Source: Gracilinanus agilis (taxonomy: Eukaryota). Taken from it: a stretch of 64,000 nucleotides of DNA. Positions 4,701-63,400 of this stretch are shown one piece after another (within the stretch, counting starts at the first letter, position 1; the number at the start of each line of letters is the position of its first letter). The DNA lies in assembly GCF_016433145.1 (NCBI RefSeq), contig NC_058134.1, positions 34,878,957-34,942,956 on the forward strand, read 5' to 3'. The notes under the pieces were generated by a model. The model was not told the origin of the DNA. It ran no database searches and saw only the letters and a list, made by a program, of their open reading frames with translations. The translations under genes and the position numbers were made by a program.

Positions 4701-7700
4701 GGAGGAGAGAGATGAGGGTTAGGCAACTCATATTAAGTGACCTGCCTAGGGTCACATAGGAAATGTCTGAGGCCAGGTTTAATATATATTTTGCATATTA
4801 CTGTTCAGTTGTTGCAGTCATTTCTGACTCTCCCTGACCCCATCTAGGGTTTTCTTAGCAAAGATAGTGGAATGGCTTGTAATTTCCTCCTCCCTCTTAT
4901 TTTACAGATGATGAAACAGGGTTAACTGATTTGCCTAGAGTCAAACAACTAGTCTGTGTCTGAGGTCAGATTTGGACTCAGGAAGATGAGTTCCTGACTT
5001 TAGATCTGACACTCTCTATCCACTTTGTCATCTAGCTGCCAATCCTTTACCTGACAGTCCTTCAAATGAAGCTATTTATCATAACCTCCTTAAGTCTTCT
5101 GACTGAACATCTCCAGTGTTTTTAAAGCAACTTTTATATGGCATTATCTCAAGGTCCTTTACCAGTCTGGTCACCCTGGAGCTCAGAGGTTAAGTTACAT
5201 TACTGTTTTTCTTTTATATGTATATTTGTCCTTGTCTCCTATTAGAATATAAACAGAGACTGTTTCATTTATTGAACTTGTATTTCTAGTTCTGTGTCTG
5301 ACACATGGGAGTTGCTTTTTAAATGCTTGCTTATCAAATCTCCCCCACTAAAATGTGAGCTGATTGAGGACAGGGACTTTATTTTTGCTTTTTTTCTGGG
5401 TCCCTTACAATTGGCACAATGCTTGGAATTTATTCAGCACTTAAAAATATTGGTTGACCTGATAAAATGATTGTCTTGGATGAGATTTGAACTCAGGACT
5501 TCCAAATTTCAAATCTAGTACACTCCATTGTGCCAGGCTGTGAGGAGTTACAATATGTCTTTAGGCCTTAAACTTCATTTATTGGAACCTGAAGGAGACC
5601 CCTGTCCCTGCAAGTTTCTTCAGAGGGATCAGAGCTGGGTTCAGATAGGAAGCAGCTAGCCATGAGGCAGTCAGAAGCTTCACGGCCTCTTCCTCCACCC
5701 AGCCCCAAAAGATGGCTCACTGACTGGTAACCTCTGCCCCTGCTTCAGAGCAGAAGGCTGAAGTTCTTCATTTAACTGGCTGGGGAGCTGGGGAGCTGGG
5801 GAGCTGCTGCTGCAGTGTGAAAGCCCTTGATGGGTATTTTAACAAGCTTTCCAGCTGGACTATATGTGGCACAATAATGTTAATCACTGAGCTCCAGAAA
5901 GGTTTTGGCCCCAGGTGACAGCTAATCAAGGCCTTTTCTTTTCCAGTAGCAACCTTACTTCCCATTGGCAGTTTGTTATGGCTAGAAAACCTGGAGCTGG
6001 TCGGTTATGACTTGAAAGGAGCCAATTGTTGGAGTTAGAGTGTACATTTTTGAAGATTTATTAAGACTGTGATGAAGAGATGAGTGGGAACTTGGAGAAA
6101 CCCTCTATCTTATTCCTTCTACACTAGAACCAATCCTGAAAGTGAGAAAACGAAACAAAGCCAAAACAACTCAATAGACAGGCATGCAAACAAGAGTTGA
6201 ATTAGTTTTTGTGGGGGATACATGAAATTGGATGAAACAATTTTATTGCTAAAGAATTCCCAAGTCAATCAAAAAGCTTTAAAAAAAAGTCTTACTATGT
6301 AACTAGGCACTGTCCGAGGTTCTGAAAATTCAAAGACAACAATGAAACAGTACAGAAAATGTTAAACCCTCTAGAATGTACATTTTATCAGGATGCTTTA
6401 GGGATTCTTTCTGAGGAGCTCAATTTTATATATTATTTAAAGTAAATCAAGTTGACAATTATTTATTATAGTACTTACTCTGTGACAAATCCATTGTAAA
6501 TTTAAAAAAAATCTTTATCTTCTGTCTTAGGAGCAATAGTAAGAGTCAATTTCAAAGCAAAACAGTGGTAAGGGACAGGCAATTGGGGTTACATGACTTG
6601 CTCAGGGTCACATAGCTAGATTGTATCTGAGGTCATATTTGAATCCTGGATCTCTTGTCTCCAGGCCTGGCTCTCTATCCACTGAACCACCTTGCTGCCC
6701 CCCACTTTGTAAATCTTAACCTGCTTTATAAGTACTATTGTTGTTATTATTATTATTTACGACTCAGAATCAGGTAATCATAGATGGAGAAAGTGCAAAT
6801 AGATACAACTATCTTATTTTAAGAATGGGAAAACTGAGACCTGGAGAGTTTGTGACTTACCCAAGGTCATCCAGTTAGTTATAGCTAATATGCAATTCAA
6901 TTCATTTTGCCTCAGTCCCCTCAAATATAAAATGAGGACAATAGCTCCTACCTCTTAGTTGTTGTGATGATGAAATGAGGTAATATTTGTAAAGTGATGA
7001 GCAGAGACCCTGGTATATAGTAGGTAACTAGTGGATGGCTGTTTCCTCCCTTCTTTGCTAATTAATTTCTTTCTGCCCTATACAATTATTTCTCTCCATG
7101 TTCTAAATTGGATCATTAAGGCACAGAGAGGTTCTCTCACACTAATAGTCACAGAAAAATGAAAATTCATGCTCTGAAACTCCCCATCTGGGACTCTTTC
7201 CAGGAAACAACAAAATAAGAAATGCTGAGAGTTGGAAGGGGACCTTGCTGATCCTCCAGTCCAACTCATGCCTAGGAAAGGAACCCTACTTCTAGTACCT
7301 AAATTCCTGGATAAAAATAAAGAACATCTAAGAGAAAGTTTATTTTAAGTATTCTCCCAAATATAAAAAAAACTTGCTTTTAAACCAAGGAAGCAAAAAA
7401 GGCTCCATTAAAAATATCACAGGGTTAGACTAAGAAGGGATCATAGAAGTCATAAAGTTCAAGCCCTTCACTTTATAGAAGAGGAAGGGGAGATTCAGGG
7501 AGGCAAAATGATTTGTTGAACATCACACAAGTAGTAAGTTGTAAAACCAGGATTGGTATCTGGGTTCTTTGGCTTTGAATCTAGAATTTTTTTGCCATTG
7601 CACTACTTTGGTAGAAAATGAGTAAAGAAAAACAATTCTCCACTCTTTTGCCTTCTTTCATCTTTCTATTAATTGCAACCTTATGATACGTTAGGAAGTG

Positions 7701-13380: not shown

Positions 13381-13640
13381 TAAAGCTGATATTTCATTGG
13401 TACAAGGCATTCCCAGGTGGGAAAAGTAGCTTGTCATATGAAAGTCAAGATCTTTCCCACAATTTATGATCTTAGAGATTTGTCTAGAGCAGTGAGAAGT
13501 TAAATGACTTGCCCATGATCACATGGACTGTATGTTAGAAGTAGGTCTGACTTTGAGGCTGGTTTTCTATTCGTTGTATTGTTCCACATCTCTTTTCAAA
13601 ATTAAGAAGAAATCAAGATTGTAGTTTCATTGGTCTAGAG

Positions 13641-13822
13641 CAGTGATGGGCAAACTTTTTAAAGAGAGAGCCAGAGGAAAAGAAATGCTCATCTGTCAGT
13701 CTGTTTCTAAGGCAATTCTTTTGGAGTTTCTTTGTATTGTATCCTACTCATTATATTCGTCAGATTAGGAATAATTTTGCACCGCTAGATCTGGCCCATT
13801 GGCCGTAGTTTGCCCATCACTG
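13641..13822. mobile_element. Non-autonomous hAT (Charlie-type) MITE, 182 bp
   Basis: 16-bp perfect TIR cagtgatgggcaaact; 8-bp TSD gtctagag/gtctagtg; same family as 63850-64000 in the opposite orientation. Confidence 0.92.
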
Positions 13823-13989
13823 GTCTAGTGAATTCCAGTGAGAAAACTCCCTCTAAGTCTACCTGTCAAGACAAACTTAGGTAAATTAATTTAGGTAAAA
13901 TTGTTATTTAATTATATTGTCTTGGCCTACTCATTAGCAACTAATATTTTCCACTTATTTAAGTCTGACTTGGTGCGAAATGTGTTTTG

Positions 13990-39074: not shown

Positions 39075-39779
39075 TTATACATTTATGGCTTTGTTATCTT
39101 TCACGTCTGTTGTGCTTGTTACAATTTCCAGAGGGAAATCTTCTGAGGGTTTTGGGGGAAGGGATGGCATTCCCTCACGGTCCCAAGAGCCAGGCAAGTT
39201 TTCCAAACTGAGAGAACTGACCGCTCCTTGACTGAAACTACCTTCCTCAGATCTGCTGGGGAGCACGAGGTGTAAGGATGTCTCCGAGGAAGAACATGCT
39301 GAGGATGAGAGCGTTGCCGAAATAGACTGGAGAGGGGTCAGTGTGGTATCTGAATGGGGAGAAGTGCACCTTATAAACTGCAAAGGACCCTCTCGGATGA
39401 CCTGATAATGAGATGGGGAATAGTCAAGGCCTGAACAATGATAAAGGTCATTGTCCAAAAGATTTTGCTCATTGGCTCCAGTTCTTTGGGGGCTGCTACC
39501 AACGGAGGAACGCTCCATTTCCCAAATGCTGGACATGCTGTTACCGTGACAAAGGTGTGCTTTGGGGCAGGCACTCTTGCCTGCTTGCTTGTGCATACAA
39601 GGTTGGTGAGCTGTCCAAGTCATTCTATTCTGTAAGCTCTCAATAGAAGGACACATGGATGCACTGTGCACTGAGCAAAACCCTGTAGGCTTTGGGGCCA
39701 TTAATACATTTTCCAGAAGATTCATTATATTCTTCATATCTTTGCTTAGTTGTGAGACTTCTTGAGTTAAGGTCATTAC
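39075..39779 (-). CDS. KCNH8: KCNH8 (Kv12.1/ELK1) terminal coding exon: C-terminal coiled coil and tail, 234 aa plus stop
   Basis: [26 protein letters not shown]...[11 protein letters not shown]...[10 protein letters not shown]...[21 protein letters not shown]...[21 protein letters not shown]...[10 protein letters not shown] matches the human KCNH8 C-terminus as I recall it, including exon phase and length. Confidence 0.97.
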
Positions 39780-39802
39780 CTGTAGGAAAAGAGGAGAGTT
39801 AG
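39780..39802 (-). promoter_or_regulatory. KCNH8: Splice acceptor, polypyrimidine tract and branch point of the last KCNH8 intron
   Basis: Minus strand reads taactaac-tctcctcttttcctacag|GTA ATG; CTAAC at 39802-39798. Confidence 0.9.
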
Positions 39803-40299
39803 TTATGTGACACTGAAATGGACCTTCATTAGTCAAGTCAATTCAAGTGGTCCCATCGGGGTTACCTTCTACCCACTCTATATATGCATGAGTTTGAGAG
39901 TGTAAACATCTTGGGGGTAGGGGCTGTTTTTGTTCTTTCGTTGTATTCCCAGTGCTGGGCACATACCAAGTGTCTAATGAATGCTTCTTGATTCATTGGA
40001 GGATTGCTAATTCTGGTATTCCTCTAATGGTGTGTGGAATTGGGGACTTGGACTCTATTTCTAGATCAGTCTTGAAGGGGCTCTGGAATCCCTGAAGCAA
40101 ATGTGACCATGACACAGTACCATTCAACTGCAAGCATAAACTCTAAATCCAACAATGATATATCTGAAGAGCTCTCTGGACCAGATGTTAGGGATTAAAG
40201 TTGTTTTCAGTATTATTTGGGATCAGACTGAGTACTTCCTACATCTCCCTAGTTGAGATGAGCTGCTTCAGAACCCGCCTGGCCTCAAATAGTGATGAC

Positions 40300-47340: not shown

Positions 47341-47480
47341 GAAAATCCAAACTATTTAGGGATCTCTCTACTCATCTGCTGACCTCTTCCCTCAGAGTAA
47401 ACTTTATTTGGGACACACAAAAGGCAGCTAAAGGGCCCAGTGAATAGGGGCACTAGACTTGAGTTCAAGTCCAGTCTCAG

Positions 47481-47675
47481 GGGCAGCAAGGTGGCTCAGT
47501 GGATAGAATGCCAGGCCTGCAGATAGGAAGTCCTGGGTTCAAATTTGGCTTCAGATACTTCCTAGCTCGGTGAAATCGGGCAAGGTATTTAGCACCAATT
47601 GCCTCACCCTTATCACTCTTCTGCCTTGGGACTGATACTCAGCATCAATTCTCAGAGAAAGTAAGAGTAAAAAAA
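47481..47675 (+). mobile_element. SINE1_Mdo-like SINE
   Basis: Full match; TSD tccagtctcag / tctagtctcag. Confidence 0.88.
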
Positions 47676-47705
47676 CATCTAGTCTCAGCCATTTCGTAGT
47701 TGTGT

Positions 47706-47803
47706 ACTGTTGTGTGGAGATGCAAAGCATGGCAACCCTGCAAAGGTACAGGGATAGCCTCACCTTTGCAGGGTTGCCATGCTTTGCATCTCCACACAAC
47801 AGT
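47706..47803. repeat. Perfect 42-bp inverted repeat with a 14-nt spacer (mini-MITE or hairpin RNA candidate)
   Basis: 47706-47747 actgttgtgtggagatgcaaagcatggcaaccctgcaaaggt is the exact reverse complement of 47762-47803. Confidence 0.98.
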
Positions 47804-49846
47804 GACCTTGGAAAAAATCACTTAACCTTTTTCCACCTCCATCTCTTTATCTATAAAATGGGGAAAGTAATAATACTTACATCACTGTATATTATTAAAA
47901 TATTAAAATAATATTTTCAGTGCTTTGCAAACAATAAAGTGCTATGTAATACTAAGATTTATTATTGTCATAAGCATTAAAGTAAGAACAAGGTTCTTCT
48001 CCTGGACTTTGGCTAATGTTTTGTAGTCACGTAATTTTTGATATTTCAAGGGTGGAAGAATTGAGTTTCCTCCTCTCCTTCATACCCCATGAACCTTGTC
48101 TGAGATCTAAAAGTGGATATTATAGCTAGCTCTTGATTAGATTGATTCATTGAAGGATGTGGGCACGAATCACATGGGATGGGAAGACATGAGATAGTTT
48201 GCTTTTGATCTGAACTCAAACCTTCAACTTCAGGTCCAGGACTCCACCAATTGTGCCACCTAAATAAGATCAGTCCATGTAGCTTTTCTTGTAATGGTAG
48301 AAGCAATGGGTATTGTGATTAGGCTTGGATGGAAACACTTAAGGCCCAGTTGCTGTGTATATATTTAATTTCTGCCTACTAAGATTATCTGATTCGTGGG
48401 CTTTAGGAATAAACAGAATGCCAGCCCATGTGGGGAGAAGAAAGTTGTGATTTTCCTTCTTGTTATTCCAGTAAGCAGATGGGGGAAGCATCTGTTGACA
48501 TAATCATCATAGTTCGAAAAGTTCTTGACCCACTGCACAGATTTTGACAAACATTGTCCACATTTCCTTGCTGGAGACAATTTGCCTCAATTCAGTGGCA
48601 CTAATTACAGGGACTGGAGTCCCCCCTCCTGCCATGGAGACTCATACATTTCACAGACTCTGATTCAGGTAATTAAATAGCCTTTCATTACAGCTTTTGT
48701 GGTGGTATGGAGTTAGTAGGAAATTCAGAAAAGTTCATTCAAACTCAATAAGCTGGCCAATGCACAAAGACTATAGGAATAATTCCAACTTTATGTCTCT
48801 TGATTCACAAAGCATTCCCTAAACAAATGCACATCCTTTATCTGCTAGCTAAAGTAATAATCATCCTTCTGCACTTGGGTAAATTTCTTCTGAGAAAGGA
48901 GCTCAAACATTTCTTTTAAAAAAGTCAGTCTATGAGCAGCTGTAGGAATCAGAGCCCAGGCAGTTGAAGAAGGTGGGGAGGAGAAGGTTGGGGTCATAAA
49001 AGACTAAAACAGAAGCTCCTCTCTTTTCAGGTACAGTCACAACCACAAGATTCTATTGCTGGAGGAGAGCTTGAGATCATCAAGTTTGGTTCCCCAAGTT
49101 TAAGGATGAGGAGACAAATCTAGACAAATGAAGTGATTTGAGCCCACAGAATGAAGGCTAAAGAGCTTTGAACTTAGAATCAGGAGATCCCTGAGGCTGA
49201 ATGTCAGCTTTGACACCTACTCACTGTGCTCATGCTACCCCTATTTGAGTCTCAATATCCTCATCTGTGAAATGGGGAAGGCGATACTTGCTTTGCCTAC
49301 CCCCTGGTGATGTTATGAGGTAAAATGATCCAGCCAGGGCAATAAGAAGTGACTAAGTGCTGATTATGTGCCAGGCACTGTGCTAGTCACTGGGAATACA
49401 AAAAAAGGGTAAGAACAGTCCTTGCCTTCAAGGAGCTCAAAATTCGAAGGGGGAGATAATAAACAAACTATGTAAAAACAAATTCAGATAATTTCAGAGG
49501 TAAGGAGCTAGCAGTAAGTGGGACTAGGGAAAGCTTCTTGCAGAAGGAACAACATTAGCTGAGACGGGAAGGAAGCTAGGGAAACTAGGAGCTGGAGGTG
49601 AGGAGGGAGAGCATTCCAGCTATGGAGAATAACCAGTGGAATGTCCAAGTGAGAGGTGAATTGCATTGTGTAAGGAGCATCAAGGAAGCCATTATCGCTG
49701 GATCATAGAGTATACGGAGAGTATAATAGTATAAGAAGAATGGAAAGGTAGAAAAAGTGAGCTTGGGTTCTAAAGGCTTTTAGAGGCCAAACACAAGATT
49801 TTATATTTATCCTGGAAGTGGTAGGGAGTCACTGGACTGTTCAAGT

Positions 49847-62779: not shown

Positions 62780-63400
62780 CTATGAACCAATTTTAATGGT
62801 GCCAAGAAACTCATTGACATAGAAATTCATTTTATAATAATGCTATATGGCAAAGAATGGTGGGATATCATGAACTCACAAGTGTCAAAATTGTAGGCAA
62901 TCCAGAGAAAAGACACTTGGCTGGTGAAAGCAAGCTCAAGGATAATACCAGGAATGGTGGGTCTGTGAATGGTGTCATATAAAACCTTATAAAGTACTAA
63001 TCTAACTAGAAAAGGATTTGGATCAGCCAAGGAGCCCAAGATGGATAAGCAATAGACAGATGGAGGGTTGCCCTTAAGTATTCAGAGTATTGAGGATATC
63101 TTCTTTGGAAGATATATAGAAGGATACAGAAGGATCACTCAAGAGAAGATCTAGACCAGTGATTCCCAAAGTGGGCACTACCGCCCCCTGGTGGGTGCTG
63201 CAGTGATCCAGAGGACCGGTGATGGCCACAGGTGCATTTATCTTTCCTATTAATTGCTATTAAAATTAAAAAAACATTAATTTCAGGGGGCTAAGTAATA
63301 CTTTTTTCTGGAAAGGGGGCGGTAGGCCAAAAAAGTTTGGGAATCACTGATCTAGAGGGAAGGGCTTTGATCTGCACTAGTGGAGAGACTGTTCAGACTT
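62780..63400 (+). mobile_element. RTE LINE 3' fragment interrupted by a hAT MITE
   Basis: IMLYGKEWWDIMNSQVSKL*AIQR resembles RTE VMLYGCESWNTTISEESKLQVTQR; ends gatctgcactagtggaga. Confidence 0.65.
63157..63349. mobile_element. Non-autonomous hAT MITE, 193 bp
   Basis: 14-bp perfect TIR cagtgattcccaaa; 8-bp TSD atctagac/atctagag. Confidence 0.92.

What the first reader, a model, noticed from the sequence alone, without database searches (positions are those of the whole stretch)
47706..47803. Perfect 42-bp-stem hairpin inserted into a MIR in the last KCNH8 intron: candidate new mini-MITE, miRNA or endo-siRNA source
Seen: the arms have no mismatch. The 14-nt spacer can add a 3-bp stem (agg-gatag-cct). 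The insert splits the MIR core tagttgtgt|gaccttgg and sits 17 bp from the TSD of a visibly diverged SINE1 insertion, so it is younger or homogenised. I found no other copy of the arm in this window. The ends can be read three ways: (a) TGTTG...CAACA, 94 bp, with a 5-bp TSD gt(g)ac/gtgac, as for integrase-type elements; (b) CTGTTG...CAACAG, 96 bp, with TA/TG, as for a MADE1-like Tc1/mariner mini-element; (c) no TSD, as for a template-switch product. Established: MADE1-type palindromic MITEs gave rise to the miR-548 family, and long perfect stems are Drosha, Dicer and ADAR substrates. Inference: it would be transcribed with KCNH8 pre-mRNA and folds on either strand, so it could be a lineage-specific small RNA locus or the marker of an uncatalogued transposon family.
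Basis: partly seen in the sequence, partly recalled or inferred. Interest (0 to 1): 0.7.

Follow-up and report, generated by a model that had tools for sequence, protein, structure and literature searches.

The report
Young palindromic insert in KCNH8 intron
A flawless 98-base mirror-image DNA block sits as a clean, recent insertion inside an old SINE in an intron of the opossum potassium-channel gene KCNH8; it is probably a small fold-back mobile element or a one-off repair product, and nothing here shows that it makes a small RNA.

Summary
Arms 47706-47747 and 47762-47803 are 42 nt and 100% complementary, with a 14-nt centre. It is the only such repeat in the 64 kb. The fold energy is 14 to 19 sd beyond shuffles.

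Ten other MIR-type SINE cores in the window read TGTGT|GACC without a break, so the whole 98 bp is a precise extra block and no host base is lost. No part of the arm occurs elsewhere in the window. That excludes a simple template switch that copies an adjacent stretch.

The simplest reading of the ends is the full palindrome ACTG...CAGT with no target duplication. TGTTG...CAACA with a 5-bp GTGAC duplication needs one lost base. The mariner TA reading fails because the target was TG.

No Rfam family, paper, viral, metagenome or prokaryote sequence matches the arm. The KCNH8 terminal coding exon lies 7.9 kb downstream on the minus strand.

Earlier follow-ups of this scan reported both young TGT...ACA fold-back MITE families and one-off hairpins elsewhere in this genome. 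My best reading is a young copy of a pre-formed fold-back mini-element (about 0.45). The main rival is a one-off repair insertion (about 0.3). Interest is low to moderate.

The parts
47706..47747 (.). Left arm of the palindrome (42 nt), begins ACTGTTGTGTGGAG
   Evidence: 100% complementary to 47762-47803
47748..47761 (.). Asymmetric 14-nt centre (ACAGGGATAGCCTC) with a 3-bp mini-stem AGG/CCT
47762..47803 (.). Right arm of the palindrome (42 nt), ends CTCCACACAACAGT
47689..47705 (+). Host MIR-type SINE core, left of the insertion, ends TAGTTGTGT. Its last 7 nt (GTTGTGT) recur 3 nt inside the arm.
47804..47834 (+). Host MIR-type SINE core, right of the insertion, begins GACCTTGG. The SINE runs on to about 47970; places 47835-47875 were left out of all searches.
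47481..47676 (+). Older CORE-SINE (SINE1-like) nested in the same MIR-type copy, flanked by AGTCTCAG at 47473-47480 and 47681-47688. It is 73-87% identical to other copies in the window.
39078..39779 (-). Terminal coding exon of KCNH8 (context), 7.9 kb downstream of the hairpin in gene sense. The exon start is approximate.
   Evidence: (P0018, named KCNH8 by JGI, 68% identity over 92% of the query)

Best explanation
A pre-formed 98-bp palindromic DNA was inserted in one step, recently, into the core of an old MIR-type SINE inside a KCNH8 intron. It consists of two 42-bp inverted ends around a 14-bp asymmetric centre, with ends 5'-AC TG...CA GT-3'. I think it is most likely one copy of a miniature fold-back non-coding mobile element, that is, two transposon or LTR-type ends with almost nothing between them. 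Earlier follow-ups of this scan reported elements of that general kind in this opossum genome as TGT...ACA fold-back MITEs.

It entered in one of two ways. One is an integrase-type reaction whose 5-bp GTGAC target duplication lost one base on the left. The other is end-joining capture of the blunt, unprocessed linear element, which leaves no duplication.

It is carried passively in the KCNH8 pre-mRNA, where it can fold into a 42-bp perfect stem. No processing into small RNA is shown.

Shown: the structure, the precise insertion, the lack of a local source and the gene context. Inferred: mobility, family membership, mode of insertion and age.
For: - Perfect arms.
- The 98 bp is a clean extra block. 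Ten of ten other MIR-type cores in the window read TGTGT|GACC contiguously, and no host base is missing or added.
- Neither arm has a source in the flanks or anywhere in the 64 kb. The DNA therefore came from elsewhere, already carrying both arms or able to make them.
- TG...CA lies two bases in from each end. The layout AC-TG...CA-GT is that of unprocessed retroelement DNA ends (my own knowledge). Junctions that keep these dinucleotides are documented (PMC2797772).
- A TGCAAAG motif occurs twice in each arm, 18 bp apart, as sub-terminal binding-site repeats often do. By my estimate the chance of this is about 0.04.
- Earlier follow-ups in this genome (unchecked here) reported young perfect fold-back MITEs with TGT...ACA ends in thousands of copies.
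- There are no differences in 84 arm bases and no CpG. That gives an age under about 12-24 My at 95% for assumed neutral rates of 1.5-3e-9 per site per year.
Against: - No second copy was seen, but only 64 kb of this genome could be searched.
- The flanks do not show the clean 4-bp duplication reported for the TGT...ACA families. The zero-event reading has no duplication at all, which is unusual for DDE or integrase transposition. The 5-bp reading needs a 1-nt loss in an otherwise unmutated young copy.
- TG...CA two bases in from the ends could be chance, roughly 1 in 16 per offset.
- The by-sequence look-up in earlier findings was blank.
- Copy number, the empty orthologous site and read support are all untested.
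Confidence: 0.45

Rival explanations
1. One-off repair product. A double-strand break between T and G of the SINE core was repaired by copying about 56 bp (arm plus centre) from a distant donor. The new strand then snapped back on itself, with ACC pairing to GGT across a 14-nt loop, and copied its own arm before rejoining. This is polymerase-theta or MMBIR-type templated insertion. The locus would be single-copy and not mobile.
For: - No target duplication in the most parsimonious reading, and no loss of flanking bases.
- No other copy in the window.
- The 7-nt GTTGTGT at the very end of the left flank recurs 3 nt inside the arm, a possible microhomology trace. I estimate the chance of this at about 0.01-0.05.
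- Template switching can make perfect stems of 30-55 nt in a single event (PMC10710096).
- Earlier follow-ups reported such one-off hairpins in this genome (unchecked here).
Against: - Classical template-switch hairpins reuse an adjacent ancestral arm. Here both arms are foreign to the host SINE, so an ectopic copy and a snap-back are both needed.
- End-joining that leaves both flanks intact to the base is not the rule.
- The GTTGTGT repeat is separated by ACT, so it is not a collapsed microhomology junction.
Confidence: 0.3
2. It is a working small-RNA locus, a lineage-specific microRNA or endo-siRNA hairpin processed from the KCNH8 intron. This does not exclude either origin above.
For: - A very stable hairpin on the sense (minus) strand, -90.3 kcal/mol.
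- It lies inside a transcribed gene.
- There is precedent: the palindromic MITE Made1 gave rise to mir-548 (PMC1784062).
Against: - No Rfam family reaches its gathering score.
- No paper in the library holds the arm sequence.
- A 42-bp flawless stem is longer than the roughly 35-bp stem preferred for microRNA precursors (PMC10710096).
- No listed run that holds the stretch is on record as RNA.
- A perfect young palindrome shows no sign yet of selection.
Confidence: 0.07
3. Assembly artefact: the palindrome is not in the animal's DNA.
For: The one strong holder, X1 with 0.92 of the sampled words over 2,940 bp, may be the sample the assembly came from.
Against: - The SINE continues in register on both sides of a 98-bp block with a unique asymmetric centre. 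Fold-back chimeras of long reads do not look like this.
- Cloning and sequencing tend to lose short palindromes, not create them (my own knowledge).
Confidence: 0.05

Closest known systems
Made1 / mir-548 palindromic MITE (Tc1/mariner, primates; PMC1784062)
   Same: A nearly fully palindromic mini-element: two inverted ends of about 40 bp around a few bases (Made1 has 37 + 6 + 37). It forms a very stable RNA hairpin when transcribed from an intron.
   Different: Made1 inserts at TA and duplicates it. Here the target was TG and the ends show no sequence relation. Made1 is multi-copy with sequenced small RNAs; neither is shown here.
TGT...ACA fold-back MITE families reported by earlier follow-ups in this genome (s1-153820, s1-179294)
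   Same: Young, perfect or near-perfect short palindromes in opossum introns with TG(T)...(A)CA termini.
   Different: Those are reported with a clean 4-bp target duplication and sizes of 115-146 bp. This one is 94-98 bp with no clean duplication. Sequence relatedness could not be compared. Those notes are unchecked by me.
Template-switch (TSM) hairpins (PMC10710096, PMC8794818)
   Same: A single mutational event that yields a flawless stem of 30-55 nt. It is lineage-specific and can seed microRNA genes.
   Different: A TSM copies a neighbouring ancestral stretch in reverse. Here both arms are foreign to the host SINE and no source lies within 64 kb.
Spy and other transposons without target duplication (PMC4122938)
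   Same: Terminal inverted repeats and a precise insertion without duplication, if the 98-bp reading is right.
   Different: Spy inserts between AAA and TTT and is known from invertebrates. Here the insertion lies between T and G in a marsupial.

Membership tests
Tc1/mariner MITE (Made1-like) | Insertion at a TA dinucleotide, duplicated on both sides | tested here: not met
   The flanks would be TA on the left and TG on the right. Ten paralogous SINE cores show the target was TG.
Tc1/mariner MITE (Made1-like) | Many copies sharing the same terminal inverted repeats, and an autonomous partner | not testable with these tools
Integrase-type fold-back MITE (TGT...ACA ends, 4-5-bp duplication; Ginger-like or LTR-end-like) | Element ends 5'-TG(T)...(A)CA-3' | tested here: met
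   TGTTG...CAACA at 47708-47801. It lies two bases inside the full palindrome, and chance is not excluded.
Integrase-type fold-back MITE (TGT...ACA ends, 4-5-bp duplication; Ginger-like or LTR-end-like) | Clean 4-6-bp target site duplication | tested here: inconclusive
   A 4-bp reading fails (GTAC against GTGA). A 5-bp reading works only with a 1-nt loss (GT-AC against GTGAC).
Integrase-type fold-back MITE (TGT...ACA ends, 4-5-bp duplication; Ginger-like or LTR-end-like) | Multi-copy family with the same ends | not testable with these tools
   No copy in the window. The look-up of earlier findings by sequence was blank, which is uninformative.
Template-switch mutation hairpin | One arm is ancestral local sequence and the other is its reverse-complement copy | tested here: not met
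   Both arms are extra relative to 10 of 10 paralogous cores. There is no similarity to the flanks beyond chance; shuffle p was 0.33-0.53.
Known microRNA family (Rfam/miRBase-derived) | Match to a curated family at or above its gathering score | tested here: not met
   The best match is MIR2587, a plant family, at 45.9 bits against a cut-off of 75.5. All hits are generic hairpin matches. Nothing reaches gathering.
Known microRNA family (Rfam/miRBase-derived) | Mature 21-23-nt reads with defined ends | not testable with these tools

The most novel reading that the evidence does not exclude
The block is a miniature fold-back made of two copies of one retroelement (LTR-type) end. It was caught with its unprocessed terminal dinucleotides (5'-AC-TG...CA-GT-3') and without a target duplication. 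That would make it a fossil of integrase-independent capture, or of aberrant gap repair, of an extrachromosomal palindromic viral-type DNA. Together with the TGT...ACA fold-back MITEs noted elsewhere in this genome, it would point to an uncatalogued class of integrase-mobilised mini-palindromes that were recently active in an opossum lineage and that scatter ready-made hairpins through introns.
Probability: 0.12. Interest if true: 0.6.

Novelty: new member of a known kind. Interest (0 to 1): 0.3.

Why it matters
If it belongs to a recently active fold-back family, it adds to the signs that small DNA elements moved recently in a marsupial genome, a group where DNA transposons are thought to be largely extinct. 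Such elements supply perfect hairpins that can become microRNA genes, as Made1 did for mir-548.

If it is a one-off, it is a tidy example of ectopic templated synthesis plus snap-back creating a 42-bp stem in one event.

Either way, nothing indicates an effect on KCNH8. Taken alone it is a neutral intronic insertion.

Tried and rejected
- **Rfam.** No family matched the hairpin.
- **Other copies or a local donor in the window.** None found.
- **Exact-match scans with the arm.** Viral contigs, JGI metagenome contigs and prokaryote genomes gave 0 hits each. These collections are not expected to hold opossum DNA, so this only excludes a viral or bacterial source.
- **Papers.** A full-text search for six 16-17-nt pieces of the arm, as DNA and as RNA, found 0 papers. 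Literature searches for opossum palindromic MITEs found nothing specific.
- **The look-up of sequencing runs.** One strong holder (X1, 0.92 of the words). All others held 0.09 or less, and all are kept as contigs.
- **Read laying.** No read, depth, empty-site or small-RNA evidence was possible.
- **Indirect copy-number test.** I searched the ORF that runs through the hairpin against 5.8 billion predicted proteins and found nothing. A positive control with an ORF through a hAT-like MITE in the window (inverted ends 13635-13828) was also blank. The test has no power and is discarded.
- **KCNH8 exon.** The PDB, Pfam and Atlas look-ups were blank or meaningless. The word search named it.
- **Penultimate exon.** tblastn of the longer homologues did not locate it. 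'Last intron' therefore stays unverified.
- **Earlier findings by sequence.** Blank, which is uninformative.

Full report
**Observation**

The region reads exactly as described. The repeat finder gives arms 47706-47747 and 47762-47803, 42 nt, 100% complementary, with 14 nt between them. Across the whole 64 kb, with arms up to 400 bp apart, it is the only perfect inverted repeat. The next best are two 21-22-nt pairs at 95% that bound MITE-like elements.

As RNA the stretch folds at -91.1 kcal/mol on the + strand and -90.3 on the - strand, with z-scores of -14.5 and -15.1. As DNA it folds at -58.4, z -18.9. No shuffle reached these values. The 3-bp mini-stem AGG/CCT in the centre appears in all three folds. 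The hairpin has no CpG and is 51% G+C.

**It is an insertion, and a precise one**

I did not rely on a remembered consensus. I took ten other MIR-type cores from the window and aligned them with the locus. All ten read ...TAGCTGTGT|GACCCTGG... without interruption. The locus reads TAGTTGTGT, then 98 bp, then GACCTTGG.

These ten cores serve as paralogous empty sites. They show that the extra block is exactly the palindrome and that no base of the host SINE was lost or added.

It is 73-87% identical to the other copies in the window, so it is old.

The hairpin has no difference in 84 arm bases. With assumed neutral rates of 1.5-3e-9 per site per year, that puts its age under about 12-24 My at 95% (the rates are my assumption). 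Homogenisation of the arms would void this bound.

**Where the arms come from**

Neither arm has another copy in the window. A 36-mer with up to 3 mismatches hits only the two arms, and blastn with word size 7 gives nothing longer than 17 nt. Local alignment of the arm to the flanks is no better than shuffles, with p of 0.33-0.53.

A classical template-switch mutation copies an adjacent ancestral stretch in reverse (PMC10710096). It cannot explain the locus by itself, because both arms are foreign to the host SINE. It would take an earlier unexplained 56-bp insertion, plus a switch whose end point happens to fall on that insertion's boundary.

One detail remains unexplained. The last 7 nt of the left flank (GTTGTGT) recur 3 nt inside the arm. 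I estimate the chance of this at about 0.01-0.05. It does not have the form of a collapsed microhomology junction.

**Reading the ends**

Three readings can be scored against the paralogous cores.

1. The whole palindrome ACTG...CAGT, 98 bp, with no target duplication. This needs no extra event.
2. TGTTG...CAACA, 94 bp, with a 5-bp GTGAC duplication whose left copy reads GT-AC. This needs one lost base. As a later mutation in a copy with no other change it is unlikely. It could, however, have arisen at insertion, because the 5' AC of the element is identical to the last two bases of the duplicated GTGAC.
3. CTGTTG...CAACAG with TA/TG. The target in all the paralogous cores is TG, not TA, so the Tc1/mariner reading is rejected.

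A clean 4-bp duplication, as earlier notes report for TGT...ACA fold-back families in this genome, is not present: GTAC against GTGA.

The layout AC-TG...CA-GT is that of unprocessed retroelement DNA ends (my own knowledge). Junctions that retain such dinucleotides are documented (PMC2797772). This is a lead, not a result.

**Comparison with known RNAs and sequences**

No Rfam family reaches its gathering score. The best hits are generic hairpin matches, such as a plant MIR2587 model at 45.9 bits against a cut-off of 75.5.

No paper in the library holds any of six 16-17-nt pieces of the arm. Exact scans of viral, metagenome and prokaryote collections were blank.

**Gene context**

The ORF 39075-39836 on the minus strand follows a pyrimidine tract and CAG, and ends in ...DNKAINV-stop. 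Its exon part (39078-39779) finds 44 relatives. One of them is named potassium voltage-gated channel subfamily H member 8, at 68% identity over 92% of the query.

The hairpin therefore lies 7.9 kb upstream of the terminal coding exon in gene sense, and the sense strand is the minus strand. I could not locate the penultimate exon, so 'last intron' is likely but not verified.

**What could not be tested**

- The look-up of sequencing runs listed one strong holder (X1, 0.92 of the sampled words). The other runs held 0.09 or less, and all are kept as contigs.
I have no read support, no depth-based copy number, no orthologous empty site and no small-RNA evidence.
- An indirect copy-number test was blank. 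It searched the ORF that runs through the hairpin against predicted proteins that include calls on run contigs. A control ORF through a hAT-like MITE in the window was also blank, so the test has no power.

**Earlier notes of this scan**

These are unchecked by me. They report two things in this genome. One is young perfect fold-back MITEs with TGT...ACA ends in thousands of copies (s1-153820, s1-179294). The other is one-off hairpins made by copying errors (s1-153817, s1-153909). They raise the prior for both main readings and do not decide between them.

**Verdict**

The structure is real in the assembly and is a young, precise insertion of foreign palindromic DNA.

- Most likely (about 0.45): one copy of a miniature fold-back element with TG...CA-type ends. 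It was inserted either by an integrase-type reaction with a flawed 5-bp duplication, or by end-joining capture of the blunt element.
- Main rival (about 0.3): a one-off repair product, made by ectopic templated synthesis followed by snap-back.
- A working small-RNA locus (about 0.07) and an assembly artefact (about 0.05) are not excluded.
- The mariner reading and a simple adjacent template switch are rejected.

Nothing suggests an effect on KCNH8. Interest is low to moderate until copy number and small-RNA data are in hand.

Noticed in passing
window 13635-13828: A 194-bp element bounded by 22-nt inverted ends (CTAGAGCAGTGATGGGCAAACT, 95% complementary). It looks like a hAT-type MITE of the kind earlier notes call very abundant in this genome.
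   Followed up: partly
window 63150-63356: A 207-bp element bounded by 21-nt inverted ends (TCTAGACCAGTGATTCCCAAA, 95% complementary), a second MITE-like element with related ends.
   Followed up: no
window 5480-5535 (-): A tRNA model hit just above gathering (30.7 bits against 29, model positions 8-63). It is probably the tRNA-derived head of a SINE and not a tRNA gene.
   Followed up: no
window 47699-47705 and 47709-47715: The 7-nt GTTGTGT at the very end of the left flank is repeated 3 nt inside the left arm. It could be chance, a target preference or a microhomology trace.
   Followed up: partly
window 47722-47728 and 47740-47746 (mirrored in the right arm): TGCAAAG occurs twice in each arm, 18 bp apart. 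This resembles the sub-terminal binding-site repeats of some transposon ends. I estimate the chance at about 0.04.
   Followed up: no
window 39078-39779 (-): In the word search, the best relatives of the KCNH8 terminal exon of comparable length are only 71-72% identical. Full-length KCNH8 proteins fall outside the tool's length range, so this says nothing about which species the window comes from.
   Followed up: no
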